Of a stretch of 64,000 nucleotides of DNA, positions 384-62,805 are shown piece after piece. A program made the position numbers and the translations under genes. Numbering within the stretch: position 1 is the stretch's first letter; each line of letters begins with the position of its first letter. The notes below the pieces were generated by a model. It was not told where the DNA came from and did no database searches. It saw nothing but the letters and a program-made list of their open reading frames with translations. This stretch comes from Macrostomum lignano (Eukaryota): positions 410,781-474,780 of the forward strand of contig NIVC01000224.1 in the NCBI GenBank assembly GCA_002269645.1, written 5' to 3'.

Positions 384-5322
<4,939 letters not shown>

Positions 5323-18752: not shown

Positions 18753-20267
18753 ATGTCCGAACCGAGCACTTCTTGTTTTATTAAATGCTGCAACGATCCC
18801 GCATGTGGCACTGGTATTCGAATCCCACAGCCATTGTGTGAGAAACACATTATGCAGGACATAGAAATTGTGCGAGTACTATGCAAAAATATGCAGAAGA
18901 AGCTGAAGCCATGGCTAAAACTGCAAAAAGAATTTCGGATGCAGCAGCAAGCTCTGTCAGTTGAGCTGCAAGAGACTGAGGAGCTGTTTGAGTCGGCTGT
19001 GGACTCGCTGATGAAGTGGAAGGCAGCTGTGACAAAGCGACTGACTGAGAGACACGACAGCGTGTTGCAGAATCTGCAGCAGTTGTCCGCTCTGCAGGAG
19101 TATGAGCGAGAAGTGACGGACGCAGAAACGCACAATGACTTCAATAAAATGTTTGAAATTTCTGGCGCATTCGATATTGAAAGTGAAGAGTTACAGGTGG
19201 TATTTGGCACGACTATTACCGAAGACTCTGAGCGAGGCACTGGAAGGACTGTGGGCGATGTGAGCGGCTGTGTGAGGGACTTGCAGCTGCTGATTGACAG
19301 ACACCTGAGTGATGTGATGCAGCTGTGCGAGTCAGCAGAGCCTCTTACTGCACAAAAGCCAATCTGTGAGTTTCAGTCTGAAATAAAAGATCTGCCGGGT
19401 TCCCCTCTCCATGTGTCATCAGGCAGCAACACGCAAGGCTTTTACGTGGACTCTCAGAGAAAGGTGGTCAAGGAGGTCACTGACAGAGAGCTCCCACAGC
19501 CGTGTCTCTTCATTAGTTTTTGTCCTAATCATAAGATAAACCACCTTCTTGCCTGCTCAGTCGACGGCTTAGTGAAAGCGCAGCTACAGCTCGACATTGA
19601 TGTCTCAAAAACTGTTGTAGGACTCTGCTGTGACAGCAAGCGACAGAGTCTTTATGTCGCCCAGTTTGATGTAGTGAAAGTGACGGACCTGAGCGGCTGC
19701 GTGACGCAGGTTTTGAACTCTAGCAGCCTGGGACAGCCAGTTGACCTTATTGCTTTGTCCTGCAGCTCTGACAAGATATTTGCTTTGAGCAAAGGCAATC
19801 CAGAATGGTCAGTGCTGTGCATCGATAAAGACAGCGGTCAGCTGCAGACCAACATTACCTTAGTTGGTGTCTGTCCGTCCGCTAAATCCATCGAGGGAAT
19901 GTCATTAATTGACAACGCGCTGCTGCTCACAGACTATGCTAATATTTACAAAGTGTGCATCGCCAGCGGTCAGCTGATCTCGACTTACCCGACCAAGCGA
20001 AGTCGCCTTGAAAAGTTTCGTAAATGTGCTGGTGTCGCGGCTCATCGGTCGGGTCTGCTGTTTGTCAGCGAGTATTCAGGGCAAGTGCTTCGTTTGATGC
20101 GGAGTGACGGCACTGTGCTGCAGACTGTCGATGTCGAGTCTCAGACTGGCAGTGGCAGGAGAAATGTTGATAGCCCGTTTGGCTTGGCGATCATTGAAGG
20201 GTGCCCGAAGGTGCTGGCGGTGTGTCAATATTCAAAATCCATTGGCCTGTATAAGTTTACTGTGTGA
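18753..20267 (+). CDS. Zn-knuckle + coiled-coil + NHL-like beta-propeller protein, copy D
   Basis: 504-aa ORF with an in-frame 6-nt deletion at DYAN-IYKV. The upstream TTTTCAG TTACAACTCA ATG context matches copy B. Confidence 0.8.
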
Positions 20268-21436: not shown

Positions 21437-24234
21437 ATGAAACAAAATATGGTCTCCGCTATCAAGTCTGGCCAGAGTCCCAACGCGGACACATTCGATG
21501 ACCTGCCACTAAACGATACACTGAAACGCTCCATCCGTAACCATGGTTTTATCGAACTGTCTACAATTCAAAATCAAGCTTTCCCTTTGTACTTGAATGG
21601 GGAAAATGTGTTTGTTCAGTCACCGTCTGGCACTGGCAAGATGTCTATGGCCGCAATTTCAGTTCTGCAATCAGTGAAACTCCCAAGTTTGAGCTCTACA
21701 AATCCTGACAATCCTGTTCTGAGTCGTACTGCTCAAGCTTTGGTGCTGACTCCGACTAGGGAGATGGCTCTGTCAGCGAGCTGCATGTTTAATGACCTGG
21801 GAAAATCAATGGGCGTATTGTGTTGCGCCTGCGTTGGAGGTATTAAGGTTTGTGATTTGGCGTATCGAATAGTTCTATTGGCGTTGTCTATTAATTATGC
21901 CATAATTATTTATTAATCGTTCGATCCCATTTCCCCAGCCGCGGGATCAGAAGACTGAGCTAGATGCAGGCGTGGACATTGCGATCGGCACCCCAGGCCG
22001 AGTTGAAGACTTAATCAATCGAGGATGGTTGAGCACTGCTCAGATACGATTGATAATCCTCACTGAGACCGACGATTTGATTAGACGAGGTTTCAAAAAC
22101 AATCTGATTAACATAACTAGTCAGATGCCTGAAGGTTTGCAGGTAGGCTGTGCTGTGCTTTGTTTAAACCTTAAAACAATATATTCCATTTTTTTTAGTA
22201 AAGAGTCGCCGACCAAACTCATTAAAGAATCGCCGTCAAAAACCAAGAAAGAATCGCCCTCAAAAGCCAAGAAAGAATCGCCCTCAAAAGCCAAGAAAGA
22301 ATCGCCCTCAAAAGCCAAGAAAGAATCGCCGTCAAAAGCCAAGAAAGAATCGCCCTCAAAAGCCAAGAAAGAATCGCCGTCAAAAGCCAAGAAAGAATCG
22401 CCGTCAAAAGCCAAGAAAGAATCGCCGTCAAAAGCCAAGAAAGAATCGCCCTCAAAAGCCAAGAAAGAATCGCCCTCAAAAGCCAAGAAAGAATCGCCCT
22501 CAAAAGCCAAGAAAGAATCGCCCTCAAAAGCCAAGAAAGAATCGCCCTCAAAAACCAAGAAAGAATCGCCCTCAAAAGCCAAGAAAGAATCGCCGTCAAA
22601 AGCCAAGAAAGAATCGCCCTCAAAAGCCAAGAAAGAATCGCCCTCAAAAGCCAAGAAAGAATCGCCCTCAAAAGCCAAGAAAGAATCGCCCTCAAAAGCC
22701 AAGAAAGAATCGCCGTCAAAAGCCAAGAAAGAATCGCCGTCAAAAGCCAAGAAAGAATCGCCCTCAAAAACCAAGAAAGAATCGCCCTCAAAAGCCAAGA
22801 AAGAATCGCCCTCAAAAACCAAGAAAGAATCGCCCTCAAAAGCCAAGAAAGAATCGCCCTCAAAAGCCAAGAAAGAATCGCCCTCAAAAGCCAAGAAAGA
22901 ATCGCCCTCAAAAGCCAAGAAAGAATCGCCCTCAAAAGCCAAGAAAGAATCGCCCTCAAAAGCCAAGAAAGAATCGCCCTCAAAAGCCAAGAAAGAATCG
23001 CCCTCAAAAGCCAAGAAAGAATCGCCCTCAAAAGCCAAGAAAGAATCGCCCTCAAAAGCCAAGAAAGAATCGCCCTCAAAAGCCAAGAAAGAATCGCCGT
23101 CAAAAGCCAAGAAAGAATCGCCCTCAAAAGCCAAGAAAGAATCGCCCTCAAAAGCCAAGAAAGAATCGCCCTCAAAAGCCAAGAAAGAATCGCCCTCAAA
23201 AGCCAAGAAAGAATCGCCCTCAAAAGCCAAGAAAGAATCGCCCTCAAAAGCCAAGAAAGAATCGCCCTCAAAAGCCAAGAAAGAATCGCCGTCAAAAGCC
23301 AAGAAAGAATCGCCGTCAAAAGCCAAGAAAGAATCGCCCTCAAAAACCAAGAAAGAATCGCCCTCAAAAACCAAGAAAGAATCGCCCTCAAAAGCCAAGA
23401 AAGGATCGCCCTCAAAAACCAAGAAAGAATCGCCCTCAAAAGCCAAGAAAGAATCGCCATCAAAAGCCAAGAAAGAATCGCCCTCAAAAGCCAAGAAAGA
23501 ATCGCCCTCAAAAGCCAAGTAAGAATCGCCCTCAAAAGCCAAGAAAGAATCGCCCTCAAAAACCAAGAAAGAATCGCCCTCAAAAGCCAAGAAAGAATCG
23601 CCGTCAAAAGCCAAGAAAGAATCGCCCTCAAAAACCAAGAAAGAATCGCCCTCAAAAGCCAAGAAAGAATCGCCGTCAAAAGCCAAGAAAGAATCGCCCT
23701 CAAAAACCAAGAAAGAATCGCCCTCAAAAGCCAAGAAAGAATCGCCATCAAAAGCCAAGAAAGAATCGCCCTCAAAAGCCAAGAAAGAATCGCCCTCAAA
23801 AGCCAAGTAAGAATCGCCCTCAAAAGCCAAGAAAGAATCGCCCTCAAAAGCCAAGAAAGAATCGCCCTCAAAAGCCAAGAAAGAATCGCCCTCAAAAGCC
23901 AAGAAAGAATCGCCGTCAAAAGCCAAGAAAGAATCGCCCTCTAAAGCCAAGAAAGAATCGCCCTCAAAAGCCAAGTAAGAATCGCCCTCAAAAGCCAAGA
24001 AAGAATCGCCCTCAAAACTCATCAAAAGCCATCAAAGAATCGTCTTTCAACTTCCTGAAAAGTTCATCTAGCACTTTAAAGAAACGCCATGCCGCTGACT
24101 AAAGCTCCGAACCTCCATCATTTCAGGTGCTGATATTCTCGCCTACAGCTCCAGTTGAATTGATGGAATTGTTAAACAGTTTGAACTTGAACCCAAGCCC
24201 AGTGCATGTTCGACCTAATCTGGACCGACCGTAA
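21437..24234 (+). CDS. eIF4A-like DEAD-box protein, N-terminal RecA domain only, degenerate catalytic motifs
   Basis: Exons 21437-21847, 21939-22142 and 24127-24234, all phase 0. Motifs: FDDLPLNDTLKRSI..GF..STIQ (Q motif), SPSGTGKM (I), LTPTREMA (Ia), GG, GTPGRV (Ib), LTETDDLIRRGF (II; DEAD replaced by TETD), QVLIFSPT (III; SAT replaced by SPT), then stop. Confidence 0.8.
22201..24035. repeat. 24-bp minisatellite (about 75 units) in intron 2 of the eIF4A-like gene
   Basis: Unit AAGAAAGAATCGCCCTCAAAAGCC, bracketed by donor GTAGGC at 22143 and acceptor TTTCAG at 24121-24126. Confidence 0.97.
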
Positions 24235-30785: not shown

Positions 30786-31069
30786 TTATTTGCATTTTTT
30801 ATCAATTAAGTTCATCAGACTAATGTACAGGCCTTGGCCTCCAGTTTAATAAAGGTGTGCATGACCGTTTGCTGTCAGTTGTTTAAATTTTCAAATACAT
30901 TTGTGGAAAAGAATTTTTTTTATAATCTTGTCTTATTCATTTTTCGTTAAGCTTAATACAATTAGCAGTTAGATTTTTAGACAAACAAATTTGAAAGGAA
31001 ATTTTGAAAAGTAAATAATTTTTTATATCGTCTAGTTACCTACAAACTGTCAGTTGATCAGCAAAAATT

Positions 31070-32450
31070 GACTATCAGTGACATGTGACTGTCAGTGACA
31101 TTTTACTTTCAGTGACATTTGATTCTCCGTGACATTTGACTAGCCAGTGACATTTGACTAACCAGTGACACTCGACTGTCAGTGACATTAGACTAGACAG
31201 AGACATTTGACTAGCCAGTGACATTTGACTGTCAGTGACATTTGACTGTCAGTGACATTTGACTGTCAGTGACATTTGACTGTCAGTGACATTTGCCTGT
31301 CAGTAACATTTGACTAGCCAGAGACATTTGACTGTCAGTGACATTTGCCTGTCAGTAACATTTGGCTAGTCAGTGACATTTGCCTGTCAGTAACATTTGA
31401 CTGTCAGTGACATTTGACTAGTCAGTGACATTTGCCTGTCAGTAACATTTGACTGTCAGTGACATTTGACTAGTCAGTGACATTTGACTGTCAGTGACAT
31501 TTGACTGTCAGTGACATTTGACTAGCCAGAGACATTTGACTGTCAGTGACATTTGCCTGTCAGTAACATTTGGCTAGTCAGTGACATTTGACTGTCAGTG
31601 ACATTTGACTAGTCAGTGACATTTGACTGTCAGTGACATTTGACTAGCCAGAGACATTTGACTGTCAGTGACATTTGCCTGTCAGTAACATTTGGCTAGT
31701 CAGTGACATTTGCCTGTCAGTAACATTTGACTGTCAGTGACATTTGACTAGTCAGTGACATTTGCCTGTCAGTAACATTTGACTGTCAGTGACATTTGAC
31801 TAGTCAGTGACATTTGACTGTCAGTGACATTTGACTGTCAGTGACATTTGACTGTCAGTGACATTTGACTGTCAGTGACATTTGACTAGCCAGAGACATT
31901 TGACTGTCAGTGACATTTGCCTGTCAGTAACATTTGACTGTCAGTGACATTTGACTAGTCAGTGACATTTGACTGTCAGTGACATTTGACTAGCCAGAGA
32001 CATTTGACTGTCAGTGACATTTGCCTGTCAGTAACATTTGGCTAGTCAGTGACATTTGACTGTCAGTAACATTTGACTGTCAGTGACATTTGACTGTCAG
32101 TGACATTTGCCTTTCAGTACATTTGACTAGTCAGTGACATTTGACTAGTCAGTGACATTTGACTGTCAGTGACATTTGACTGTCAGTGACATTTGACTAG
32201 CCAGAGATATTTGACTGTCAGTGACATTTGCCTGTCAGTAACATTTGGCTAGTCAGTGACATTTGCCTGTCAGTAACATTTGGCTAGTCAGTGACATTTA
32301 ACTGTCAGTGACATTTGACTAGCCAGAGACATTTGACTGTCAGTGACATTTGCCTGTCAGTAACATTTGGCTAGTCAGTGACATTTGACTGTCAGTAACA
32401 TTTGACTGTCAGTGACATTTGACTGTCAGTGACATTTGACTGTCATTCAA
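31070..32450. repeat. 17/18-bp minisatellite between TEX10 and XPNPEP3
   Basis: Unit GACTGTCAGTGACATTT with CTAGYCAG variants. Confidence 0.95.
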
Positions 32451-35500: not shown

Positions 35501-38500
35501 AAAAATGACCCAGTTCTTAGTAATGTGGCTGGTGAGTAGTATTTTAATGTTATTACTGGTATCGGATAAGGTCGGGAAAACTATAAATAGCTCGTAGCAA
35601 CCTTATCTTACTATCAGTGTCTGGATGAAATTGGATTCAAATGCTACCATTCTGCTCTATAATAGCTCATAATCTTAATACTAAAGGTGGTGCGTTGTTT
35701 GTAGTAAAATAAAAGTCAATACCGCAAGCTTGAAATTTGAAAATTGAAAGTTAAAAATCATCATTTAATTTCGGCGATAGGGAAAATCAAAATTGTGAAA
35801 GTTGAGTAATCAGTATAATATTGTCTAAAAGTTTATAGACTGTAAAATGCAGGGAGTGAGATTCAGGGAGACAGGTAGTGAGATGCAGGGAGACAAGGAG
35901 TGAGATGCAGGGAGACAAGGAGTGTGATGCATGGAGACAGGGAGTGAGATTCAGGGAGACAGGTAGTGAGATGCAGGGAGACAGGGAGTGAGAGTCAGGG
36001 AGACAGGTAGTGAGATGCAGGGAGACAGGGAGTGAGATGCAGGGAGACAAGGAGGGAGATGCATGGAGACAGGGAGTGAGAGTCAGGGAGACAGGTAGTG
36101 AGATGCAGGGAGACATGTAGTGAGATGCAGGGAGACAGGGATTGAGATGCAGGGAGACAAGGAGTGTGATGCATGGAGACAGGGAGTGAGATTCAGGGAG
36201 ACAGGTAGTGAGATGCAGGGAGACAGGGAGTGAGAGTCAGGGAGACAGGTAGTGAGATGCAGGGAGACAGGGAGTGAGATGCAGGGAGACAAGGAGGGAG
36301 ATGCATGGAGACAGGGAGTGAGAGTCAGGGAGACAGGTAGTGAGATGCAGGGAGACAGGGAGTGAGATGAAAGGAGACGGAAATTAGGATGTAGGAGACA
36401 GGGAGTGAGATGCAGGGATACAGGTAGTTGGATGCAAGGAGACGGAAATTAGGATGTAGGGAGACAGAGAGTGAGATGCAAGGAGACAAGGAGTGAGATG
36501 CAAGGAGACAAGGAGTGAGATTTAGGGACACAGAGTGAGATGCAAGAAGGCAGGAATTAAGATGCAGGGAGTCAGGGGTTAGATCTATATACTAAAAATG
36601 GTCTGCCGGTAGGTATCTATCTAGGTAGGTATGTGATCGATTTTAGCAAAAATTAAATCTGTATTTCCATGTAGAGATCATATGGAGTTCAAATAGAGAT
36701 CATCTGATGCTATTGCATGTGAAGTGTCCATTTATAACCGCTTTCACATAGTTTTTTCCTTATCATTTTGAAATGTATTAGTTACCCGGCATCTCATTTC
36801 ATTTATTGGCCAAAAAATCTGACCAATTTTTTTGCTATTTTACTAGAGACTCACCTCGAAACCAAAAATCTTCAACTAGTCTGTTGGTTTTCTAGCGAAC
36901 TGCTGCTTGTTTTAGCGAGGGAATTTCACATTTCCTATTTCTATGCATGTAGGAGGAGACAATTGATTTATAGCGGTGTAGTTAAGTGCTGCCATGGCAA
37001 CGGATTTATAAATCCCCTATGCGTGATTTGAATATCTGTTTGTTTTTAATGCGATTTTGCTTGAAAATATTTTTTGTTAATATCAGCTATTTTATTCAAA
37101 GCGTTGCTTGATTTGAATATAAATAACTGAGTAGGCGGATAGGATATGGTAGAGATATAATACGACATTGGGATAGGAAGATCTGAAAAAAGAGAGATTC
37201 AGGGATACAGGGAGAAGAGATGTAGGCAGATAGGAAGTAGAGATGTAGGGAAGTGGGGAGAAGAGATGTGGGGATAGATGGAGAACAGATTCAGGGATAG
37301 AGGGAGTAGAGATGTAGGGAGATTTTTTTGAGAAAAGATTAAGGATAGAGGGAGTAGAGATGTAGGGAGATGTGGAGTAGAGATATAGGGAGACGGGAGT
37401 AAAGATATAGGGAGACGGGAGTAGAGATATAGGGAGACGTGGAGTAGAGATATAGGGAGACGGGAGTAGAGATATAGGGAGACGGGAGTAGAGATATAGG
37501 GAGACGGGTGTAGAGATATAGGGAGACGGGTGTAGAGATATAGGGAGACGGGAGTAGAGATATAGGGAGACGGGGAGTAGAGATATAGGGAGACGGGGAG
37601 TAGAGATATAGGGAAACGGGGAGTAGAGGTGCAGGGAGACGGGGAGTAGAGGAGCAGGGAGACGGGGAGTAGAGGTGCAGGGAGACGGGGAGTAGAGGTG
37701 CAGGGAGACGGGGAGTAGAGGTGCATTGAGACGGGGTGTAGAGGTGCAGGGAGACGGGGAGTAGAAGTGCATTGAGACGGGGAGTAGAGGTGCATTGAGA
37801 CGGGGTGTAGAGGTGCAGGGAGACGGGGAGTAGAAGTGCATTGAGACGGGGAGTAGAAGTGCATTGAGACGGGGAGTAGAGGTGCATTGAGACGGGGAGT
37901 AGAGGTGCAGGGAGACGGGGAGTAGAAGTGCATTGAGACGGGGAGTAGAGGTGCAGGGAGACGGGGAGTAGAAGTGCATTGAGACGGGGAGTAGAGGTGC
38001 AGGGAGACGGGGAGTAGAAGTGCATTGAGACGGGGAGTAGAGGTGCATTGAGACGGGGTGTAGAGGTGCAGGGAGACGGGGAGTAGAAGTGCATTGAGAC
38101 GGGGAGTAGAGGTGCATTGAGACGGGGAGTAGAGGTGCATTGAGACGGGGAGTAGAGGTGCAGGGAGACGGGGAGTAGAAGTGCATTGAGACGGGGAGTA
38201 GAGGTGCAGGGAGACGGGGAGTAGAAGTGCATTGAGACGGGGTGTAGAGGTGCATTGAGACGGGGAGTAGAGGTGCAGGGAGACGGGGGAGTAGAGGTGC
38301 ATTGAGACGGGGTGTAGAGGTGCAGGGAGACGGGGTGTAGAGGTGCATTGAGACGGGGAGTAGAGGTGCACGGAGACGGGGAGTAGAAGTTCAGGGAGAC
38401 GGGGGTAGAGATTTAGGAGGTGGGAAGTGGAGAGGTAAGAAGATGGGCAGCGGAGATACAGAGTCGTATGAAACGACTCAATGATAACATCTCATACAAA

Positions 38501-48945: not shown

Positions 48946-49790
48946 ATTGGGAGGCTTGGCAAAAGGCAGGCGTACATGATTTAAGCTACACAATCTAGCA
49001 CAGACTTTTTATACACAATCAGCATTGTCTTCTCCATTTAAAAACCCCATATACTAAAAAAACAAATCTAGCTATGCTATTTTTCCTGCAATAGGGAAAA
49101 TTTTCCCTGTCTAATCCGCTCTGCTGCATCAGAATGATCTCCGCTCATTCTACTTAGCTGCTGTCTTCTAAAATAAGCGCTTTTAATGTCTGCCGCTGGC
49201 AATTTCAAACGGCTCTCGACGAGAATGTAGAGAAAATCGTTTGAGTTTTTTTGGAGACGCAGTGTAGAGATCTCCAAATACGGTACAAAGTAAACTACTA
49301 TAAGTAGTAACGTAAAAATGCGAAAATGCGAATTTAAAATTTCCGAGTTGTCATACTCTATCTTTGAAAGACCACGAAAACAACGAGTGTTCATCTTTTG
49401 CAACATCTAAATTCAGAATCCCAAATATGGTACTCGATGCTCAAATCTATTGTATTCTATTCAATTTTTGAGAGGTCAAATTTCCAAAACGCGAAATCGT
49501 CACCTACTCAAAATAGCCTGATTCTCGCAAAATTTTACTATAAATACAAGCCAAAATCCGAGCTAAAAATCTCAGACTCGGAGCAGCCTCAAAACACCTT
49601 GAGTTTATTGCAGAAGCTAATCGAGGCTACCGATAGGAGCACACAACTCCGATTCCGTTATTTCTAGAAGAAGACGCCCTTTTTGGAGGACCTCGTTATT
49701 GTTATAGAAAGTTGACTTTGTTATTAGGGCGCATCGTTGATATTGATTTCTACTCTCGAGGAACACTGCGACGTCGATTTGTGGTCGGGA

Positions 49791-49882
49791 GGTTCCGCCT
49801 CCCGGAGCGCGCTCGCGCGCTTCCCATGGCTGCCGCCTTCACGCGGCGGGACCGTCCGGGTTCGCCCGGCCAAGTGCAGCCA
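49791..49882 (+). ncRNA. Predicted HDV-like self-cleaving ribozyme at the 5' end of the LINE
   Basis: Hand-folded in the correct order: P1 GGTTCCG 49791-97 / CGGGACC 49847-53; P2 TGGCTG 49827-32 / CAGCCA 49877-82; P3 CCG 49833-35 / CGG 49844-46; L3 CCTTCACG; J1/4 GT; P4 CCGGG-TTCG-CCCGG 49856-69; J4/2 CCAAGTG. Confidence 0.72.
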
Positions 49883-52800
49883 CCACCCCGGACCCGTGCG
49901 AGGGTCTTCGAGCGCCCCGGGTTTTTCCACGCTGAGCCAGGCCTCCCAGCTCACCTGGCTCAGCTGCTTCTCAGAGCTGGAGACGTCGAGTCCAACCCTG
50001 GGCCGGCCTTCCCGTGCGGAGGCTGTGCCGAGGAGGTAGCCAGGGGCTACTCCACCTGCTGCTCCGACTGCGGCCTGTGGTGGCACCGCCGCTGTTCCCG
50101 CCTCACTATTGCGGCTATCAACCGGCTCCACCGGGACAAGGCACCGTGGCACTGTCCCACCTGCGCCCACCAGCCTGCCGCTTCAGCGCCGCAGCCCGCT
50201 GCGACTCCGGCCCCTCCGCGGCTGCAGGCTCCACTGGCACCCACCAGACGCCAACGGCTACGACTCCACCTCCCCCGAACCCCGCACCGGCACCCCCGCC
50301 CCCCCTGATGGCGCAACCAGCGCGGGCGGGGCGCCGAACAACAGCGGGGCGGCTTTCCGCATCGTCCAGCTCAACGCGGCAGGGCTCCGCTCCCGCAAGC
50401 TGGAACTGCTCCACTTCCTGGAGAAGCAGGGCGCCGACGTCGCCTGCATCCAGGAGACGAACCTGTCCGGCAACACAGCGGCCCCACGCCTCAAAGGGTG
50501 GCAGATCGCTGGCCGGAAGGACCGCAACATCGGCCGCGACGGGGAGGCAGCCAGAACCCACCACGGGGGCGTCTGCTTCCTTGTCAAGGAGGGCATTCAA
50601 TTCGCCGACCTTCCTCTAGGCGAGCTCGTCACCCACGCCACGTCCGCCGAAGCCTCGGGCCTCCGTATCCACGACCCCCGGCTACCACGTCCCCTGGATG
50701 TGATCAAAATCTACCTCCCGCCGGTCCGCGCCGCGGACGGCCGCACGGACGCCTTCGAGCCCGACTGGATCCCCGTTTCACGGGACTCGTTGGTGCTGGG
50801 CGACTTCAACGCCCACCACGGGATGTGGGACGCCTCGGCGGACGACGACGAGCTGGGCAGGGCCCTCGAAGACTGGGCGACGACCTACGACCTGGTCGCT
50901 CTGAACGACGGCTCCCCAACTAGGATCAGCCCCCGCGGCCTGCCGAGCTCCCCTGACGTCTCCTTCGCCCACGCCTCCTGGCAAGACCGGATCGAGTGGC
51001 GAACCGGGGAGCACATCGGCTCAGACCACCTGCCGATCATCATCGACATCGCAGCCTCCGGCCCGGCCCGCTCCAGCTCCAAGCGCCTGACGCGGTACGC
51101 CTACCACAAGGCGGACTGGGACCTGTTCCAGCGGACCCTCGACCAGGCCCTGGCCAGCTGGCCGGAGCGCCCCCCACGCACGGTGCCCGTCGCCGCCAAC
51201 CGGTTCGCGTCCGCCGTCACCAGCGCCGCCAAGGCGGCCATCCCGAGAGGCTGCCGGCGCGCCCCGATCGCCTGGTGGTGCCCGGAAGCCGAGGCGGCCT
51301 GCACCGCCCGCCGCGCGGCGCTCGAAGCGCTTCGCGCGAGCCCGGACGACCCGGCGCTCTCGGCCGCGTACCAGGCTGCTGCCGCCGCGGCTGCTCACGC
51401 CATCTGCCGCGCCAAGGAGTCGCTGTGGCGTGATTTCATCACTGACCCGGGTCACGACCTGTGTTCCGCCGACCTCTGGCGGATCATCCGGGCCCTCGAC
51501 GGACGGTCCCAGGGCACCCCCTCGTCGGCTGCCATCCAGGGCTCCACGGGGGCACCGGCCGTCTCCGACAAACAGAAGGCCGCGCTTTTCTGCCGGGAGT
51601 ACGCGGCCGTCAGCAGGCTCCCAAGAACAAGGCGGAAGACCGGCCGGTCATCCAAGAAGCCCGTCACACGCTTCGCGCCCCCTGCAGCTGCCAAGGCCTC
51701 CGCAGCGGCCCCTGCTCCGACTTCCAGCCCGACGCCCTCCGCCGCGCCTTGGTGCGCCTGCCGGACCGCTCGGCCCCGGGACCGGACGGTGTCGCGAACA
51801 TCATGCTGAAGCATCTGTCCGAACTGGGGCTCCGCTGCCTCCTGGACCTCCTGAACCTCTCGTGGAGGACGGGGGGGTGCCCGCCCCGTGGCGCCTTGCG
51901 GAGATCCGCCCGATCCCCAAATCGGACAAGCCAGCCGGCCTGACATCCAGCTTCCGCCCTATCAGCCTCCTCAGCTGCCTGGGCAAGCTCGCGGAGAAGA
52001 TGGTGAACGAGCGGCTGTCCTACATCCTCGAGGCAAATGACGCTCTCCACCCGTCGCAAGCCGGTTTCCGTCAGGGCCGCTCCACGGAGGAGCACATCGC
52101 CGCGGCGGCCCAGTACATTTTTGACGGTTTCCAGGCCAAGAAGCCGGCAGCCCGCACCGCTCTGCTCCTTGCAGACTTCTCCAGAGCCTACGACCGCGTC
52201 TGGAGAGCCGCCCTCATCGTCAAGCTCGGTCGGAAGGGGATCCCCACGTGCCTCATCCGCTGGCTCAAGGGATTTCTCTCCGACAGGAGGGCCTTCGTGC
52301 GGTGGGTTAGTGCGGCCTGCAAGCCAACCGTGTTCTCCGAGGGGCTGCCGCAGGGGTCGGTCCTCGCCCCGATCCTGTGGGTGATCTACATGGACGACCT
52401 CCTGGACGGCGCCCCCACGAACTGCCTCACGCTGGCGTACGCCGACGACAGCACCTTCGGCGCGCAAGGGACCACCCCTCGGGAGTGTGAGCGGGCCCTG
52501 CAACCGGCGGCCGACTGGCTCGTGCGCTGGTCCCAAACCTGGAAGGTGGACCTGAGCCGCACCAAGTCGGTCGTCGCTTTCTTCTCGCTCGACCCCCGGG
52601 AGGTCAACGGAAAGGTCCAGCCGCGCATCCTCCTCGGCGACTCGCCAGCTCCGTTCGAGCTGCATCCGAGGCTCCTGGGAGTGCACCTCGACTCCCAGCT
52701 GACCTTCCGCCACCACGCCGAGCTCCGGCGCCGCGCCCTCCAGCAGCGCACCGGCGTCCTACGCTGCCTCGCGGGCCGCGACTGGGGCCAGGACGGCCAG

Positions 52801-54204
52801 CGCCTCGCCCAGCTCTACCGCACCTACGCGGAGGCGGCCGCGCTCCACGGCGCCTCCACGTGGCTCACCTTCGCGTCCGACTCCTGCCGGGACGAAGTCG
52901 AGATTGCGCACCGATCGGCCGCCCGCGTCATCACTGGCTGCTGCCGCTCGACCGCCATTGGCGCCCTCATGGCTGAGGCCGACCTCGTGCCCCTGGCGAC
53001 CAGAGCGGAGGCGGCAGGCGCAGCCCTGTTCGAGCGAGCCCTCCGTCACCGACAACCGACTCCGCTCCGCGCTGCAGCGGGCAAGACCTCTACGCCCCGC
53101 TTGCGCGCTCACGGGGAGCCTGGGGCCTTCCGTAGGAACTGGCGCGACTCGGCGCAGCACCTGAGCGCCGCCGCCGGCCTGGCCACCCTCCCCCGGGAGC
53201 AGGAAAACCTCCCTCCGCCGCCATGGTCCGACACCAGCCGGATCACCATCCGCTGCGACCTCCTGACCGCGACCTCCCGAGAGGAGGCGCCCCACGTCAG
53301 AAAGCTGGCCGCGCTAGAGACGCTGGCGAGCCTCCCGCCCGCCGACCTGGAGCTCTGGACAGACGGTTCAGCCTCCGGGGGCACCCTCAACGGCGGAGCG
53401 GGGGCGGTCATCTTCAGCAAGACCGCGCCGCCAGTCCACCTGTCGCAGGCTGCGGGCCGTTACTCTTCCTCCTTCCGTGCCGAGGAGTCGGCTCTCCGGC
53501 TGGGGCTTCAGCACGTCGCCTCCAGGCCGGACCTTGCCTCCCTGAGCGGCCTCCGCTGCCTGACGGACTCGCAGTCCCTGCTCCGAGCCCTCGAGAAGGG
53601 ACCGTCCAAGTCCTCCTCGCCAGCGTGCCGGGAGATCTGGACGCTGCTGACCCACGTCGCCGCCCGCTTCCCAATCTGGCTGCAATGGGTCCCCAGCCAC
53701 TGCGACCTCCGGCGGAACGATGCTGCGGACGTCACCGCCAAGACCGCGGCCGGCCTCCCCCAGAACGAGACGCCGATCGACTTCGGGTCAGCGCGGGCCG
53801 CCCTCCGCCGGGTCCTCGCTGAGCGCACCCGCGAAGCCAACGCGGCCGACCCGCACTGCGCCACCCACCGTCTGGCAACCGCCATCGCCGCCCCGCGGCC
53901 ACGCCTTAACCGGGCCGACGCGGTGACCCTCGCCCAGCTGCGCACGGGCCACTCACCGCTCCTGCGCTGGTATCGGCACCGGATCGGCCTGGACACCGCC
54001 GCCACCTGCCCCCGCTGCGGGGCCGCCGACGAAGACGTGGCCCACGTCCTCCTGCACTGCCGGGCCCTTGACGACCTTCGGGCCCGCACCCTAGGGCCAA
54101 ACCCGTCCCTGGCCGTCCTCTCGACGGACGGCCTCCGCGCGCTCGATTTCCTCCGCACGGTAGGGGCGCAGACACGCCCCCCGGATCCAACCGGCCGGGA
54201 GTAA
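49826..54204 (+). CDS. LINE polyprotein: 2A peptide, PHD finger, AP endonuclease, reverse transcriptase, RNase H, C-terminal Zn knuckle (3 frameshifts as assembled)
   Basis: HLAQLLLRAGDVESNPGP (49952-50005). PHD CGGC..CCSDCGLWWHRRC..WHCPTC. APE IVQLNAAGL, ACIQET, LGDFNAH, SPDVSF, GSDHLPII. RT APGPDG, FRPISLL, DFSRAYD, GLPQGSVLAP, YADD. RNase H WTDGS, AEESAL, TDSQS, WVPSHC, NDAAD. CPRC..HVLLHC. Frame changes near 50160-50305, about 51620 and about 51875. Confidence 0.9.
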
Positions 54205-55331
54205 CAACAACAACAACGTCGATTTGTTACGCTCTCACTTTCGGCCGATTTTAGAAATCAAGAAGACTGCTCAGAAGGAAGAAGCTTCAAGGAGACGAGC
54301 TCTACAGACGCGTGCTACAAAGAAGAGGAGCCCACAATAGTAAGTGATCACTGACTTTGTTCCCAGGCTTAAGTGTCTGGAAGTGGGAGTTTTCGGGTGA
54401 CTGATCACCACCCGATCAAACTCTTCAGCAGAATATATGGGCAGATTTTTTGCATTTTGTTTTTTTCATCTCAGCATACTCTGTGTGATGCAGCAGCGGA
54501 CATGGTTTGTATTTCTTCTGGTCTGACTCTCCCTTGCTCTGCCAACCCTGGGAATCCAGGCCCTTAGCGAATGACTCTCCTCGATGAGTCACTCCTTACG
54601 CCCACCTCACTCCTCCTTCACGGCCTACTCCTTTCCTCCTTATTAGCAGAATCGAGCTATTGAAGACCCTTTCCGATGTCTATGGCCCAAAAGGAAGTCC
54701 GTGGACCAACCAGTTTTTTTATTTGAAGTTATTGGGTTGAGCTATACTACTAACTATCAAGGACCACTGGAATGTTATAGTCTATAGTCTAAAAGTCTAT
54801 ACAGTCTATAGTAGTCCTTGCTAACTATATATGACATACTAATGCCCTGGTTCAACTGTTGATTTCTACTCCATTTTGTTTTGTTAAATAAACGCAAACA
54901 GGAGTGTACAGCGGCCCTAAACCTTATCTATCATTAGGCATGTACACTTCACTGTGCTTTGGGGGTTGGCCCTCGGGGCGTTAATTTCACGAGCAGAGCC
55001 AAGCCGAGGTTCCAATTTAGCCAAAAAATTAGCATCAAGCCTGGGCCGGCCATGGTCCCCATTAGACGTGCGTTATAGTTACAATGAAAAGCAATTCTCC
55101 CCACTAAAGGATTCAATAGCCTGCGCAGTGTCTCGATTGGCTTGGAAAATGTCATACTACTACATGTAGGGCAAGCTATTCATTACTGTCACTCACTATG
55201 CCGTATGCCGCCCTTTAGCTAGCATTTCACTGCCTCGATCCAGACAAAAGATCAACCCCCCTACACACGGGCCCTCCTTCCCTGTACTGACTATAGCACT
55301 CACGTGAATATTGATGTGAATACTATTTACT

Positions 55332-58627: not shown

Positions 58628-61600
58628 ATGGAGCCGCTCATGCAGCTGGTGGTTCCCGAGCTTGATGGCGGCGTCTTGAGACCGCTATTCGACACTATGC
58701 TCCAACAAGGTGTCAATGCAACTGACGACGTTGAATGCAGTGCCAAAGCAAGCACTGTTAGTCAGAACCGCAGCTTCTGCGAACAGAATGTAACCTACGT
58801 GGACCTTGGCAAACCCTTATTAGCCTGGTACCTTCAAAGGTTAAAGTCTCAGGTGCCGCTGTTCGTATCGGCTGGACTGATCTGGCTGATTCTCCTGGCA
58901 GCACTGATCGCAGTCTACTCTCGACTAGCCAGGACGACTAAAGTGCATGAAGCTCACAGATCTAACAGCCCTGTCGAGCGGAAACACCTGCGACCATTGT
59001 TTGTCTTCCTGACCTCCATAGTTCTGCTCATCGTCATTGGCGTTGTGCTGGCCGTGCTGCACTGGGCTGGACGAGCTCGATTCTCCGGAATGTCCGATCT
59101 GGGAGGCTGCAGAAACGGGACGAAGGACTGTGGCGACGACCAGCAGCAGAGGCAGCTGTGGAATCTCTCATCTGGCACTGGTCGCACGCACATGGTTGCC
59201 GCGTTCCGGCGGACAATTGACGAATTTGACGCTTTCGTTGAGCAGTTCATCGTAGAGACCAACGCCACGGTGCTAGCGGTGTGCAAAGAGGCCCTACCAG
59301 AAGTTCTTGCCGTACTGCAAACTGTTGCAACCGACCTGCTGGACAGGCTGGCCAGAGACTTCAAACTGACGCCTCTGTTGACGTCCTTCGATGAGTTCAT
59401 CAATCTGGTGAAGCTGCTGGTTGCCAGCATGCGGGCAATTATGGAGTCCCGCGACACCGTGGTTGAGCCACTCGTCCAGTTCTCTACGCTGGTTGACTCG
59501 GCCAGGCGAGATCTGCAGGAGCTCACAACCGATGCTTGCGCCTCGAACGCCTCTTCCGCGCCAACCTCAGCCGCGACCGCGGATCTGTGCCGAAGAATTT
59601 CTGCTCAACTCAACCTGCTGGACGTTGGCATTGATCAGCGACGCTTAAAGTCGGACAGCAGCGTGACAGTTGTCACATTGTTGGAGAAGATGTTTAAGCT
59701 CAACTTTAGCCAAGTTGAAGACCAGGTTAAGAACGCCAAGGGTCAGCTGTACGGCAGTCTGGAGCTAGTTCGAGCCGAAGTGAGAAAACTCTTTGATAAA
59801 TTAACTCTTGAAGTGTCGCAAAACTTCAACGCGGCCCTGACAGATGCTGAGTTATTTCGCGACGGAGTACGCGGTGCCAAGAAGGACCGAGGATTCTTGG
59901 ACGCCATGAAAACTGTGGACAGCCTTGTACACAGCTTCACAGTAGCGCTGGCCTTTGGCAGTGTTGCATTTGTAATCATTAATGTCATTGCAATGTTCAT
60001 CTCGATTCGCTACCTGCTTAGCTTTCGCGGTATCAGCAGCGACAGTACAGACGGAGGAACAGATGGAGAGCAAATCCCTCTGCAGTACATTGGGAATGGA
60101 AATTCTGCGCCAGTAGCCAATGGCAACGGACGTTGCATCGAGTTGCCGTTCCTTCAAAACAGCGATATCGTCCGGGTTGACCAAAGACAGAAGGCCAAGG
60201 AGCCTCGCGACTGGCACCTGGTCTGCCTGTTTGCCAGCGGTTTGCTGGTTCTGGCGGCGCTGATCTACGCGTCCGCGGTGTTCTACGCTGGCGCCGAGAC
60301 CCAGATGGACGCGTGCCGCTACCTGACCACGGAGACAGGCATCAGCTACCTGGATCAGCGCGTCTACAGTGCAATGATTAACAGGTTATGGCCGCTAGTT
60401 GAAGCATTGATGCCAAATCATTTGATTGATTATTTGGGCTTCAGCAGCGATTTGATGCCGAGAGAATTGCTCAGCACCATCGTGAGCCGATGCGGAAACG
60501 ACTCGGTGACAATCTTCCAAGCTCTCGGCCTGAGCAGTGCCGGGGCAGTAGTCAACGCCAGCCAGTTGCTGCGTGCGCCATTCGTGACCAGGGAACTTAG
60601 CAAAGGCGGTGAAATGATACAGGTGAAGAGGTCTTGAAGAGTTTTCGTTTTCTACTTGTAGACGGAGTTCGCAGGGATTAGCTTTTTTCTCCTAGAGGTG
60701 AACGCAGTTCCGCCATAAACAAATTCCCAAATGTCAGATAGATAAATCATTTCATGCAGAAGAAGGGGTGATGAGAGGCGAGTGAAGAGACGAGAACGGA
60801 GAGAAGAGACGAGAGGGGAGATGAGTGAGGAGAGAAGAGACGAGAGGGGAGAGAGGAGGGAAGAGGGGAGAGAAGAGACGATAGGGGAGAAAAGAGACTA
60901 TAAGAGAGAAGAGACGTGAGGGGGGGAAGACGAGGGGAGAGAAGAGACGAGAGCGGAGAGAAGAGACGAGAGGGGAGAGAAGAGACGAGAGGGGAGAGAA
61001 GAGACGAGAGGGGAGAGAAGAGACGAGAGGGGAGAGAAGAGACGAGAGCGGAGAGAAGAGACGAGAGCGGAGAGAAGAGACGAGAGGGGAGAGAAGAGAC
61101 GAGAGCGGAGAGAAGAGACGAGAGGGGAGAGAAGAGACGAGAGCGGAGAGAAGAGACGAGAGCGGAGAGAAGAGACGAGAGCGGAGAGAAGAGACCAGGG
61201 GAAAGAAGAGACGAGAAGGGAGAAAAGAGACGAGAGGAGGAGAAAAGAGACGAGAGCGGAGAGAAGAGACGAGAGGGGAGAGAAGAGAGGAAGAGAAGAG
61301 ACGAGAGCGGAGAGAAGAGACGAGAGGGGAGAGAAGAGACCAGGGGAAAGAAGAGACGAGAGGGGAGAAAGAGACGAGAGGGGAGAAAGAGACGAGAGCG
61401 GAGAGAAGAGACGAGAGGGGAGAAAAGAGACGAGAGGGGAGAGAAGAGACGAGAGCGGAGAGAAGAGACGAGAGCGGAGAGAAGAGACGAGAGCGGAGAG
61501 AAGAGACCAGGGGAAAGAAGAGACGAGAGGGGAGAAAAGAGACGAGAGGGGAGAGAAGAGACGAGAGCGGAGAGAAGAGACGAGAGCGGAGAGAAGAGAC

Positions 61601-62805
61601 GAGAGGGGAGAGAAGAGACGAGAGCGGAGAGAAGAGACGAGAGGGAGAGAAGAGACGAGAGGGGAGAGAAGAGACGAGAGCGGAGAGAAGAGACGAGAGC
61701 GGAGGAAAGAGACGAGAGCGGAGAGAAGAGACGAGAGGGGAGAGAAGAGACGAGAGCGGAGAGAAGAGACGAGAGCGGAGAGAAGAGACGAGAGGGGAGA
61801 GAAGAGACGAGAGCGGAGAGAAGAGACGAGAGGGAGAGAAGAGACGAGAGGGGAGAGAAGAGACGAGAGCGGAGAGAAGAGACGAGAGCGGAGGAAAGAG
61901 ACGAGAGCGGAGAGAAGAGACGAGAAGGGAGAAAAGAGACGAGAGGAGGAGAAAAGAGACGAGAGGGGAGGGAAGAGACGAAAGGAGACACTAAAGGAGA
62001 AAAGTGTAAGAAAGTGCGTAAGACTACAAGGAGGACGTGAGCAACTGACACTCATGTGACACGCTTGCAAAACACTCGAAAATTTCGCAGGACCTCGTCC
62101 GCGATCTGGACACAAACAATCTCATTCCGCCGAGGTGGACGATCTCCTGAAGAATACCCTGCCAAATTTCGCTTCGGCAATTGACTCGGAGAATTTCGCT
62201 TCGAGCATTCTGGAATTGAACAAACCGTTGCTGTTACTGTCCGCAGCGGACTTTCGCAGCCTTCGCGGCACCTGAGCCGGCTTGAGGACAATCTGAGGCG
62301 AGCAAATTCTACCGATCGAAGACCCGACCTGATCAACTACATGGCGCACAAAACTGAGAGAAATATCGACAGATGGAACCGGACACTCATAGCGGGACTA
62401 AAATTTCTATTAGGAAATTTTACAACTCTGCAAACGAATCGAAGATTAACAAATTTGACGTTTAGTCTGACGGTTGATGCGTTGAATCTTAAAAAAACTT
62501 TAGCGAACAAATATTTCTTGCTAAGGTCGATTGCTAGACGCTACAATGAGACTCTGTTTGAGCACATGTCGATGATTGCCGAGCTTGGGAACAGCCTCAT
62601 CAGTCGGCTGCTCAATCGGGTTGGACGGTGCGGTCCGCTGCGCGACATCTTTCAGATTTCCGTCAAATGGTGCCAGGTGCAAATTGAGCCACTGCCAGAA
62701 ACTGGGATCTACTTGATGGCGTCTTGTATTGCATTTTACATTATGGTGCATCTCATGCTGTGCCTCATGTATCGCATGAGAACGAAAACTGAGGTGTACT
62801 CTTAA
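58628..62805 (+). CDS. Pentaspan membrane glycoprotein, prominin-like (prominin/tweety topology)
   Basis: Exon 58628-60622 gives TM1, TM2, a ~290-aa helical N-glycosylated loop, TM3, TM4 and the start of a second large loop. Intron 60623-62090. Exon 62091-62805 ends in TM5 (GIYLMASCIAFYIMVHLMLCLMY) but needs two single-base insertions (about 62128 and 62272) to stay in frame. Confidence 0.65.
60775..61990. repeat. 19-bp GA-rich minisatellite, intronic
   Basis: Unit GAGAAGAGACGAGAGSGGA. Confidence 0.95.

What the first reader, a model, noticed from the sequence alone, without database searches (positions are those of the whole stretch)
49783..49882. HDV-like double-pseudoknot ribozyme capping a retrotransposon and containing its start codon
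Seen: all helices of an HDV-like fold occur in the required order. P1 is 7 bp with one U.G pair (GGUUCCG/CGGGACC), P2 is 6 bp (UGGCUG/CAGCCA), and P3 is CCG/CGG around L3 CCUUCACG. A GU junction leads to P4 (5 bp, capped by a UUCG tetraloop), J4/2 is CCAAGUG with a candidate catalytic C at 49870/49871, and J1/2 holds an extra hairpin (GAGCGCG-CUCG-CGCGCUU). The first ATG of the ORF (49826) overlaps the P2 5' strand. Established: the trypanosomatid L1Tc/ingi elements and R2 elements use 5' HDV-like ribozymes to excise their RNA from host transcripts. From memory, the L3, GU and J4/2 segments resemble the L1Tc ribozyme; this needs verifying. Inference: the RNA self-cleaves 5' of G49791, giving an uncapped transcript whose initiation codon is structurally gated. 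P1.1 is non-canonical (at best one G.U pair).
Basis: partly seen in the sequence, partly recalled or inferred. Interest (0 to 1): 0.85.

Follow-up and report, generated by a model that had tools for sequence, protein, structure and literature searches.

The report
HDV-like ribozyme capping a retrotransposon
This 100-base stretch is very probably a hepatitis-delta-virus-type self-cutting RNA at the front of a now-broken jumping gene, which is a known arrangement found here in a family where it had not been described.

Summary
A descriptor as strict as this candidate hits once in the window, against about 0.1 hits per shuffled window. The stretch lies at the 5' end of a 4.4-kb GC-rich non-LTR retrotransposon (49783-54215) with a 12-bp target-site duplication and the layout 2A-PHD-APE-RT-RNase H.

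Four other lineages of related elements, from metagenome and ENA contigs at 30-50% protein identity, carry the same motif in the same order. In two of these lineages, 12 insertions with unrelated flanks start exactly at the first base of P1.

Across 15 sequences, 97% of pair cells are paired, against 26-45% when partners are slid. Fourteen of 21 pairs show compensatory changes. The unpaired L3 U and G and the J4/2 C-A-A are invariant. A covariance model built without the window finds this site at 40 bits, with the next hit at 12.

So the main interpretation holds. The corrections:
- A register shifted by 2 nt fits better (P3 GCC/GGC, L3 UUCACGC) and gives a canonical one-pair P1.1 (C49840-G49854).
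- The J1/2 hairpin contains the ancestral P1 strand.
- This copy starts 8 nt upstream of the predicted cut and has at least 3 frameshifts.
- The start codon inside P2 is specific to this lineage.
- No Rfam HDV family matches.
- Catalysis is untested.

The parts
49771..49782 (+). Left target-site duplication, ACGTCGATTTGT
   Evidence: There are exactly two copies in the window, and none of the shuffles gave two.
49783..49790 (+). Eight extra bases (GGUCGGGA) between the duplication and the predicted cleavage site. Probably a 5'-junction addition. They can pair with CCUCCC (49798-803) and compete with P1.
   Evidence: Relatives have no such bases.
49791..49796 (+). P1 5' strand, GGUUCC. The predicted cut is 5' of G49791. 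G49797 could add a 7th pair.
   Evidence: Six of 6 pairs with 49848-53. Duplex energy is -7.5 kcal/mol. P1 covaries across lineages.
49797..49826 (+). J1/2 (30 nt) with an 8-bp hairpin, 49804-11/49816-23, loop CUCG. This insertion is specific to the window lineage; the two lineages with mapped 5' ends have 2-3 nt here.
   Evidence: Structured J1/2 domains are known in large HDV-like ribozymes (PMC4908430).
49819..49824 (+). GCUUCC, the positional homologue of the relatives' P1 5' strand, 2 nt before P2. Here it has a C.C mismatch against P1' and is buried in the J1/2 hairpin.
   Evidence: The covariance model built without the window aligns its P1 here. Duplex energy is only -2.2 kcal/mol.
49826..49828 (+). 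The only in-frame AUG upstream of the 2A motif. Its U and G are the first two bases of the P2 5' strand.
49827..49833 (+). P2 5' strand, UGGCUGC
   Evidence: Seven of 7 pairs with 49876-82. Five of 6 counted P2 pairs show compensatory changes. RNAalifold predicts P2 independently in relatives.
49834..49834 (+). J2/3, a single unpaired C
   Evidence: This position is A in L034-type relatives, which breaks the alternative register.
49835..49837 (+). P3 5' strand, GCC (homology register)
   Evidence: 100% of cells paired. The first pair is G-C, A-U or G.U in different lineages.
49838..49844 (+). L3, UUCACGC. U49838 and G49843 are invariant. C49840 is the P1.1 partner.
49845..49847 (+). P3 3' strand, GGC
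49848..49853 (+). P1 3' strand, GGGACC, directly following P3'
49854..49855 (+). J1/4, GU. G49854 pairs with C49840 to form a one-pair P1.1.
   Evidence: This pair is C-G in 13 of 15 sequences and U.G in 1.
49856..49869 (+). P4, CCGGG-UUCG-CCCGG. It is the shortest P4 among the three lineages where P4 has a clear closing helix.
   Evidence: Four of 5 base-of-P4 pairs are compensatory.
49870..49875 (+). J4/2, CCAAGU. C49870 is the candidate catalytic cytosine. A49872 and A49873 are invariant.
   Evidence: C, A and A are invariant in 15 of 15 sequences. The first J4/2 position is the catalytic C in HDV-like ribozymes (PMC10879173).
49876..49882 (+). P2 3' strand, GCAGCCA
49964..50005 (+). 2A-type ribosome-skipping motif, LLLRAGDVESNPGP. 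It would release the leader peptide that the ribozyme region encodes.
   Evidence: The layout 2A-PHD-APE is known in non-LTR elements (PMC3708506).
50015..50164 (+). PHD-type zinc finger (weak match)
   Evidence: Pfam PF00628, E 0.0015, below the curated cut-off. Relatives carry PHD hits.
50367..51041 (+). AP-endonuclease domain, in a different reading frame from the N-terminus
   Evidence: Pfam PF14529 and PF03372. Frames.
51913..52578 (+). Reverse transcriptase domain
   Evidence: Pfam PF00078, E 1.4e-31.
53344..53751 (+). RNase H domain
   Evidence: Pfam PF00075, E 8.8e-9.
54202..54215 (+). Stop codon followed by a (CAA)n tail, the 3' end of the element
   Evidence: L042 has the same kind of tail.
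54216..54227 (+). Right target-site duplication

Best explanation
Bases 49791-49882 are a copy of an HDV-like (nested double-pseudoknot) self-cleaving ribozyme. This ribozyme forms the 5' terminus of a family of single-ORF, APE-type, RNase H-bearing non-LTR retrotransposons.

**Proposed mechanism (inferred, not shown).**
- The element is transcribed from upstream DNA, or by read-through.
- The RNA folds into P1/P1.1/P4 stacked beside P2/P3.
- C49870, at the start of J4/2, acts with Mg2+ bound near the L3 U49838/G49843 pair to cut the backbone 5' of G49791.
- This gives an element RNA with a 5'-OH and no host sequence.
- That RNA serves as both messenger and template for target-primed reverse transcription. 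This would explain why relatives begin exactly at G1.

**What is particular to the window lineage.**
- The 5' end was extended by about 28 nt. A new P1 strand (GGUUCC) matches P1' perfectly.
- The old P1 strand (GCUUCC, 49819-24) no longer matches P1' and is locked into a J1/2 hairpin.
- The first in-frame AUG now lies at the J1/2-P2 border.
- The catalytic core is therefore also read as a leader peptide, which the downstream 2A motif would detach.

**State of this copy.** It is a dead insertion with at least 3 frameshifts. It has 8 extra bases at its 5' junction.
For: **Shown.**
- Every helix pairs as stated.
- There is one strict-descriptor hit in 64 kb, against about 0.1 per shuffled window.
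- The motif lies at the 5' end of an element bounded by a 12-bp duplication.
- Five lineages at 30-50% protein identity carry the motif in the same order.
- In alignment A5, 97.3% of cells are paired, against 26-45% when partners are slid. Fourteen of 21 pairs have changes on both sides. None of 500 shuffles reached the observed score (the 13-sequence version is).
- RNAalifold, run on an unedited MAFFT alignment of relatives, finds P2, P3 and P4 with compensatory pairs.
- The unpaired L3 U and G and the J4/2 C-A-A are invariant while the helices vary.
- The catalytic C is the first base of J4/2 in this ribozyme class (PMC10879173).
- Twelve insertions with unrelated flanks start exactly at G1.
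- A covariance model built without the window hits this site at 40.4 bits, with the next hit at 11.6.
- The distal P1 duplex is -7.5 kcal/mol and the proximal one is -2.2.
- Structured J1/2 domains, 6-7 bp P1 stems, variable P4 and 0-2 nt J1/4 all fall within the known range (PMC4908430; PMC3774820).
Against: - No cleavage has been measured.
- No Rfam HDV-type family matches the window or its relatives, even at E up to 10.
- This copy begins at 49783, not 49791.
- With those 8 bases attached, the predicted lowest-energy fold sequesters the P1 strand in a GGGAGG/CCUCCC hairpin.
- The base pair at the cut is G-C here, not the G.U of HDV.
- The isolated 92-nt fold is no more stable than shuffles (z -1.0).
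- The cross-lineage alignment was cut into segments by hand. The J1/2 and P4 interiors were removed, and 2 nt were dropped from L042. It therefore leans towards the model.
- The lineages are few, so independent compensatory events number roughly a dozen or fewer, not 50.
- The register of P3/L3 is not settled by covariation.
- Uniform 5' ends could also come from a fixed transcription start.
Confidence: 0.75

Rival explanations
1. It is the same ribozyme, but it cuts at the ancestral position, 5' of G49819. It would use GCUUCC (49819-24) as its P1 strand, as the relatives do. The upstream 36 nt would then be a leader that is removed.
For: The covariance model aligns P1 to 49819-24, 2 nt before P2, exactly as in the relatives. 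Five of 6 positions can pair with P1'.
Against: There is a C.C mismatch at the second pair, next to the cut. The duplex energy is -2.2 kcal/mol, against -7.5 for the distal strand. The strand is held in an 8-bp GC-rich hairpin. P1' C49852 matches the distal G49792, not C49820. This inserted copy retains all 36 upstream bases.
Confidence: 0.08
2. It is a conserved, structured 5' UTR that does not cleave. It could be an internal promoter, a binding site for the element's protein, or an IRES-like fold. The uniform 5' ends of relatives would then mark a transcription start.
For: Uniform 5' ends fit a fixed start site as well as a cut. In L1Tc the same 77 nt act as both promoter and ribozyme (PMC3185411). 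No Rfam ribozyme model matches.
Against: The conserved features are those specific to HDV-like catalysis. P1' directly follows a 3-bp P3. L3 is 7 nt with invariant U and G. A C is invariant at the first J4/2 base and is followed by invariant A-A. The pseudoknotted P2 covaries. A promoter acting on DNA would not need compensatory changes in four helices.
Confidence: 0.1
3. It is a ribozyme by descent, but this copy is inactive. The 8-base junction addition and the G-C pair at the cut would trap or slow the fold, in an element that is already dead.
For: There are at least 3 frameshifts. The alternative GGGAGG/CCUCCC hairpin and the GGUC/GACC pairing dominate the predicted fold when the 8 nt are present (-53 against -40 kcal/mol for the nested part of the ribozyme fold).
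Against: All core bases and all helices are intact. The nested energy leaves out P2 and tertiary contacts. Upstream inhibitory pairings reduce activity but do not abolish it in L1Tc (PMC3185411).
Confidence: 0.3
4. The helices are a chance arrangement in GC-rich sequence.
For: The loose descriptor gives thousands of hits. The fold-energy z-score is only -1.0.
Against: The strict descriptor hits once, at the element's 5' end. The motif is conserved with covariation in five lineages. The independent covariance model hits at 40 bits.
Confidence: 0.01

Closest known systems
L1TcRz, the HDV-like ribozyme in the first 77 nt of Trypanosoma cruzi L1Tc and related ingi-clade elements (PMC3185411, PMC4035085)
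   Same: - The ribozyme forms the very 5' end of a single-ORF APE-RT-RNase H element.
- The element also has an N-terminal 2A sequence.
- P1.1 is a single pair.
- Upstream bases can interfere with folding.
   Different: - The host here is not a trypanosomatid. The closest named protein relatives come from a barnacle, an acoel, a sea slug and fungi, and none of the top 100 is trypanosomatid.
- A PHD finger lies between 2A and APE.
- The window lineage has a 30-nt J1/2 with a hairpin.
- The AUG lies inside the ribozyme.
- Sequence similarity to Pr77 was not tested.
R2 element ribozymes (Eickbush and Eickbush; PMC3774820)
   Same: - The HDV-like fold processes the element's 5' end.
- P1 is 6-7 bp, P4 is variable, J1/4 is 0-2 nt and J1/2 can be long.
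- 5' junctions carry non-templated additions and duplications.
- There is a published model for 5' extension with a shift of P1.
   Different: - R2 is site-specific (28S rDNA) and uses a restriction-like endonuclease.
- This element is APE-type with a 12-bp duplication in satellite-rich DNA.
- R2 cleavage often lies in upstream rRNA sequence.
HDV genomic ribozyme and the mammalian CPEB3 ribozyme
   Same: - The topology is the same.
- L3 UUCACGC shares U1, C3, C5, G6 and C7 with HDV UCCUCGC(U), and 6 of 7 bases with CPEB3 UUCACGU. Both comparison sequences are from my memory.
- The catalytic C follows P4, and two A residues come two positions later.
- P1.1 is one pair, as in CPEB3.
   Different: - The pair at the cut is G-C instead of G.U.
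- J4/2 is 6 nt.
- J1/2 is long and structured.
- The Rfam models for these families do not score it.
drz-Agam-2-1, a large mosquito HDV-like ribozyme with a P1.2 domain in J1/2 (PMC4908430)
   Same: A stable hairpin in J1/2 is joined to P1 and P2 by short linkers. In the mosquito ribozyme this arrangement speeds cleavage.
   Different: Here the hairpin is short (8 bp). It is built partly from a retired P1 strand. The linkers are 7 and 3 nt, and P2 is only 7 bp rather than 12.

Membership tests
HDV-like self-cleaving ribozymes | Nested double pseudoknot in the order P1-J1/2-P2-P3-L3-P3'-P1'-J1/4-P4-J4/2-P2' | tested here: met
   All strands pair in that order. The strict descriptor gives one hit. 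97.3% of cells are paired across 15 sequences.
HDV-like self-cleaving ribozymes | P1 of 6-7 bp whose 3' strand directly follows a 3-bp P3, with an L3 of 7-8 nt | tested here: met
HDV-like self-cleaving ribozymes | Cytosine at the first position of J4/2 (the catalytic C) | tested here: met
   C49870 is invariant in 15 of 15 sequences. The feature is as stated in PMC10879173.
HDV-like self-cleaving ribozymes | P1.1 of 1-2 bp between L3 and J1/4 | tested here: met
   C49840-G49854. This pair is C-G in 13 of 15 sequences and U.G in 1.
HDV-like self-cleaving ribozymes | L3 U and G placed to form the metal-binding reverse wobble (HDV U20 and G25, from memory) | tested here: met
L3 position 1 is U and position 6 is G in all 15 sequences under the homology register.
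HDV-like self-cleaving ribozymes | G.U wobble at the base of P1. This is typical of HDV and CPEB3 but is not universal. | tested here: not met
   The window has G49791-C49853. Across the 13 sequences with a scorable first pair, 8 have G-C, 4 have G.U and 1 has C-G.
HDV-like self-cleaving ribozymes | Mg2+-dependent self-scission that yields a 5'-OH and a 2',3'-cyclic phosphate | not testable with these tools
   This needs in vitro transcription and cleavage assays.
Rfam HDV-type families (HDV ribozyme, CPEB3, drz-Agam and others) | A covariance-model score at or above the curated threshold | tested here: not met
   No such hit at the gathering threshold or at E up to 10, in the window, L034 or L003. 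These models are narrow and cannot represent the pseudoknot.
Ribozyme-capped non-LTR retrotransposons | The element's 5' terminus coincides with the predicted cleavage site | tested here: inconclusive
   Met in 12 insertions of relatives with unrelated flanks. Not met in the window copy, which carries 8 extra nt.
L1Tc/ingi clade | The reverse transcriptase groups with the Ingi clade, and the Pr77 hallmark sequence is present | not tested
   No reference sequences were available. The top 100 RT/RNase H relatives include no trypanosomatid protein. Only the domain order matches.
2A ribosome-skipping peptides | The C-terminal motif D(V/I)ExNPGP near the N-terminus of the ORF | tested here: met
   DVESNPGP at 49982-50005. 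Skipping activity is not testable here.

The most novel reading that the evidence does not exclude
The window lineage may preserve an intermediate stage of how an HDV-like ribozyme moves its own cut site and gains a peripheral domain.

- A 5' duplication or extension supplied a new P1 strand (GGUUCC, 49791-96).
- P1' changed to match the new strand (C49852).
- The retired P1 strand (GCUUCC, 49819-24) was reused as half of a J1/2 clamp hairpin.
- The start codon moved into the ribozyme, so the catalytic core now also encodes a throw-away leader peptide that the 2A motif removes.

This would be a natural example outside R2 of the 5'-extension model. It would also show where J1/2 domains come from.
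Probability: 0.35. Interest if true: 0.55.

Novelty: new member of a known kind. Interest (0 to 1): 0.42.

Why it matters
[quoted passage not shown] This finding adds a family rather than a new principle.

It still has three uses:
- **New family.** It identifies a ribozyme family that the Rfam models miss. The family occurs in at least five element lineages from metagenomic and eukaryotic contigs, and it has clear covariation. It could seed a new covariance model.
- **Parallel with L1Tc.** A 5' ribozyme is paired with an N-terminal 2A peptide outside trypanosomes. This supports the idea that uncapped, ribozyme-processed messages and 2A leaders go together.
- **Evolution of the cut site.** The window copy shows a retired P1 strand inside a J1/2 hairpin. 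That makes it possible to test how cleavage sites and peripheral domains evolve.

Tried and rejected
- **Rfam.** I scanned the whole window at the gathering threshold and three short regions at E up to 10. There were no HDV-type hits.
- **Second copy in the window.** None found, either with a pattern search or with the covariance model.
- **Loose descriptor.** It gave 13,974 combinations on one strand and was useless as evidence.
- **Fold energy.** Not informative. The z-scores were -1.0 and +0.3.
It scores almost as well as the homology register on the one covarying pair.
- **A 5-bp extended P3 hairpin (CCGCC/GGCGG).** The energy minimum contains it. I rejected it as the conserved state because L034-type copies cannot form it.
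- **P1 at the element's first bases (GGUC/GACC, 4 bp).** I rejected this because two unpaired G residues would separate P3' from P1'.
- **Clade assignment.** The names of RT homologues did not resolve it.
- **L039 and L040.** They showed no motif and are probably truncated at the 5' end.
- **L041.** Its P1 strand is uncertain, with a candidate about 120 nt upstream, so its P1 cells were masked.
- **Similarity to L1Tc.** I could not check it, because the papers I read do not print the sequence.
- **Host organism.** Not identified. Pfam on host ORFs gave nothing.
Full report
**The observation**

- P1 is GGUUCC(G) paired with (C)GGGACC, with one U.G pair.
- P2 is UGGCUG(C) paired with (G)CAGCCA.
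- P4 is CCGGG-UUCG-CCCGG.
- The J1/2 hairpin has 8 bp (49804-11/49816-23).
- The AUG is at 49826-28, and its U and G open the P2 strand.

Helices in the right order are not rare by themselves. A loose descriptor returned 13,974 combinations on one strand. A descriptor set to the candidate's own quality hit once in the window, at 49791-49882. It gave a hit in 2 of 20 dinucleotide shuffles of the window and in 3 of 100 shuffles of the GC-rich element. Those thresholds were chosen after seeing the candidate, so this is only a rough measure of rarity.

**The element**

A block of about 70% GC lies in host DNA of about 45% GC. It is bounded by a perfect 12-bp duplication, ACGTCGATTTGT, at 49771-82 and 54216-27. 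It ends with a stop codon and a (CAA)n tail.

It encodes, in order:
- a leader peptide;
- a canonical 2A motif (LLLRAGDVESNPGP, 49964-50005);
- a weak PHD finger;
- an AP endonuclease;
- a reverse transcriptase;
- an RNase H;
- a C-terminal Cys/His region.

It is therefore a single-ORF APE-type non-LTR retrotransposon. The layout 2A-PHD-APE is known from Crack, CR1 and STR elements, and 2A-APE-RT-RNase H is the L1Tc/ingi layout (PMC3708506).

The copy is broken. A comparison with a full-length relative needs three reading frames, and the N-terminus lies in a frame different from the endonuclease. Frame changes fall at about 50109-50308, 51548-51632 and 51871-51883. The clade is unresolved. The named relatives come from a barnacle, an acoel, a sea slug and fungi, and none from trypanosomatids.

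**Relatives**

The protein databases hold nothing closer than 50% identity. A scan of metagenome contigs with an N-terminus-plus-endonuclease alignment returned 30 loci. Contigs carrying more distant ENA proteins were also fetched. Four further lineages carry a motif in the same order as the window.

1. **JGI group** (L001, L003, L007-9, L016, L017, L023, L030). The motif reads GCUUCC-UG-UGCGGC-C-ACC-UUCUCGU-GGU-GGAAGC-GU-[long P4]-CAAAGC-GCCGCA.
2. **ENA group** (L034, L036-38). The motif reads GGUUCC-AGC-GACUCC-A-GCC-UGCACGU-GGU-GGAACU-GC-[P4]-CAAAUU-GGAGUC.
3. **L042.** P1 is CCGCCU/GGGCGG, P2 is GGAUCC(C)/(G)GGAUCC, L3 is UUCACGA and J4/2 is CCAACC. It has a (CAA)n tail like the window.
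4. **L041.** P2 is GUCCGAC/GUCGGAC, L3 is UCUCCGU and J4/2 is CAAAGA. Its P1 strand is uncertain.

In the first two groups, 12 insertions with unrelated upstream flanks begin exactly at the first base of P1. This is what self-cleavage at that base predicts. A fixed transcription start would give the same pattern.

**Covariation**

I cut each sequence into homologous segments. I removed the J1/2 interior and the inside of P4, dropped two bases of L042, and masked the uncertain cells. MAFFT then gave a gap-free core alignment.

| Measure | 13 sequences | 15 sequences |
|---|---|---|
| Pair cells that are standard pairs | 97.1% | 97.3% |
| Same, with partners slid by 1-3 columns | 26-46% | 26-45% |
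| Pairs with changes on both sides | 11 of 21 | 14 of 21 |
| Shuffles reaching the observed covariation score | 0 of 500 | 0 of 500 |

The segmentation was done by hand and so leans towards the model. The lineages are few, so the independent events are roughly a dozen or fewer. Two checks do not depend on my segmentation:
- RNAalifold, run on an unedited alignment of nine JGI-group sequences, predicts P2, P3 and the base of P4 with compensatory pairs.
- A covariance model built from ten relatives without the window finds 49819-49881 at 40.4 bits (rough E 2.5e-9). The next hit in 64 kb scores 11.6 bits.

The unpaired bases that stay fixed while the helices change are L3 positions 1 (U) and 6 (G), with positions 3 and 5 (both C) nearly fixed, the G of J1/4, and J4/2 positions 1 (C), 3 and 4 (A, A). 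The first J4/2 base is the catalytic cytosine of this ribozyme class (PMC10879173). From my memory of the HDV structure, the fixed L3 bases correspond to U20, C22, C24 and G25. The two A residues correspond to A77 and A78.

It is broken in L034-type copies, and its seventh P1 pair fails in 8 of 13 sequences. The register shifted by 2 nt has these features:
- P3 is GCC 49835-37 / GGC 49845-47.
- L3 is UUCACGC.
- C49834 is unpaired.
- P2 is 7 bp.

It pairs in every sequence. It also turns the non-canonical P1.1 into a canonical C49840-G49854 pair, which is kept in 13 of 15 sequences. The catalytic candidate is then C49870.

*The J1/2 hairpin is not just an insertion.* The covariance model aligns the relatives' P1 strand to GCUUCC at 49819-24, two bases before P2, exactly as in the JGI group.
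- That strand has a C.C mismatch against P1' (-2.2 kcal/mol).
- It forms the 3' half of the hairpin.
- The distal GGUUCC pairs perfectly with P1' (-7.5 kcal/mol).

This matches the 5'-extension model proposed for R2, in which a duplicated or added 5' segment supplies a new P1 and P1' adapts to it (PMC3774820). Relatives L001 and L023 carry partial 5' duplications directly upstream of G1, so such events do occur in this family.

**Points against, or unresolved**

- No Rfam HDV-type model matches the window or the compact relatives, even at E up to 10. HDV-like ribozymes are usually found with structure descriptors rather than sequence models, so this lowers the claim of membership in the curated families, not the claim about the fold.
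- This copy starts 8 nt (GGUCGGGA) before G49791. Non-templated additions at 5' junctions are documented for R2 (PMC3774820).
- L042 has GGUCGGGGAG about 85 nt upstream of its own P1. I estimate the chance of that at a few per cent, and I cannot explain it.
- With the 8 nt attached, the predicted fold prefers a GGGAGG/CCUCCC hairpin that hides the P1 strand. This copy may therefore cleave poorly.
- The pair at the cut is G-C rather than G.U.

**The start codon**

AUG 49826 is the only in-frame AUG before the 2A motif. This is specific to the window lineage.
- Relatives start translation 45-170 nt after the ribozyme.
- The position of the JGI group's AUG reads GAG in the window and AUC in L017.
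- Start codons are therefore not conserved in the family.
- Whichever leader peptide is made, the 2A motif would detach it.

The claim that the fold gates initiation is untested. HDV-like ribozymes have been linked to translation initiation of retrotransposon messages (as cited in PMC4908430).

**Verdict**

This is a genuine HDV-like ribozyme by fold and by comparative evidence. It caps a dead copy of a non-LTR retrotransposon. It is a new member of a known kind. Its evolutionary detail is interesting: a retired P1 strand, a new J1/2 domain, and a core that is also translated. Catalysis, the exact cut site and the clade all remain to be shown.

Noticed in passing
window 8278-9828, 12571-14091, 18753-20267 (+ strand): Three tandem, intron-free paralogous ORFs of about 505 aa, 83-85% identical to each other. 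They have a Cys/His-rich N-terminus, a probable coiled coil and a repeat-like C-terminus. Pfam finds no family for them.
   Followed up: partly
whole window, e.g. 649-1437, 22224-24017, 31068-32445, 37193-38417, 60773-61985: The region is packed with micro- and minisatellite arrays, more than 25 in all. The retrotransposon lies between such arrays.
   Followed up: no
window 3470-3689 and about 60270-60510: A 42-nt satellite unit (GACCCGGATCAAACCCTAATCCGTAAAATTCGTCCGGAAACT) forms an array at 3470-3689. Related repeats with the same period occur near the other end of the window.
   Followed up: no
L001 226-250 and L023 about 1788-1803: Two relatives carry partial duplications of ribozyme bases directly upstream of G1: the first 15 nt in L001 and nt 7-22 in L023. 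This shows that 5'-junction duplications recur in this family.
   Followed up: partly
L042 9-18 and 48-57, compared with window 49783-49792: GGTCGGGGAG and GGTCGAGGAG lie in a repeated unit upstream of the L042 ribozyme. They resemble the window's 8 extra 5' bases (GGTCGGGAGG). It could be chance or a conserved leader.
   Followed up: no
window 49883-49963 and the equivalent regions of L003, L008, L009 and L017: The stretch between the ribozyme and the 2A motif can also be aligned across lineages (ACCCC..GGGAUC..GGG hairpin-like segment, then GGGUUUUU). It may be a second conserved RNA element or a conserved leader peptide.
   Followed up: no
window 54205-54215; L042 about 4420-4438; L003 about 4455-4472; L041 about 4325-4340: The 3' tails directly after the stop codon are short simple repeats that differ by lineage: (CAA)n in the window and L042, (GA)n in L003, and (GAA)n in L041.
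   Followed up: partly
window 58628-60637 (+ strand): A 669-aa ORF with a weak Prominin-like match below the Pfam threshold. It overlaps satellite sequence and is probably not a real gene.
   Followed up: no
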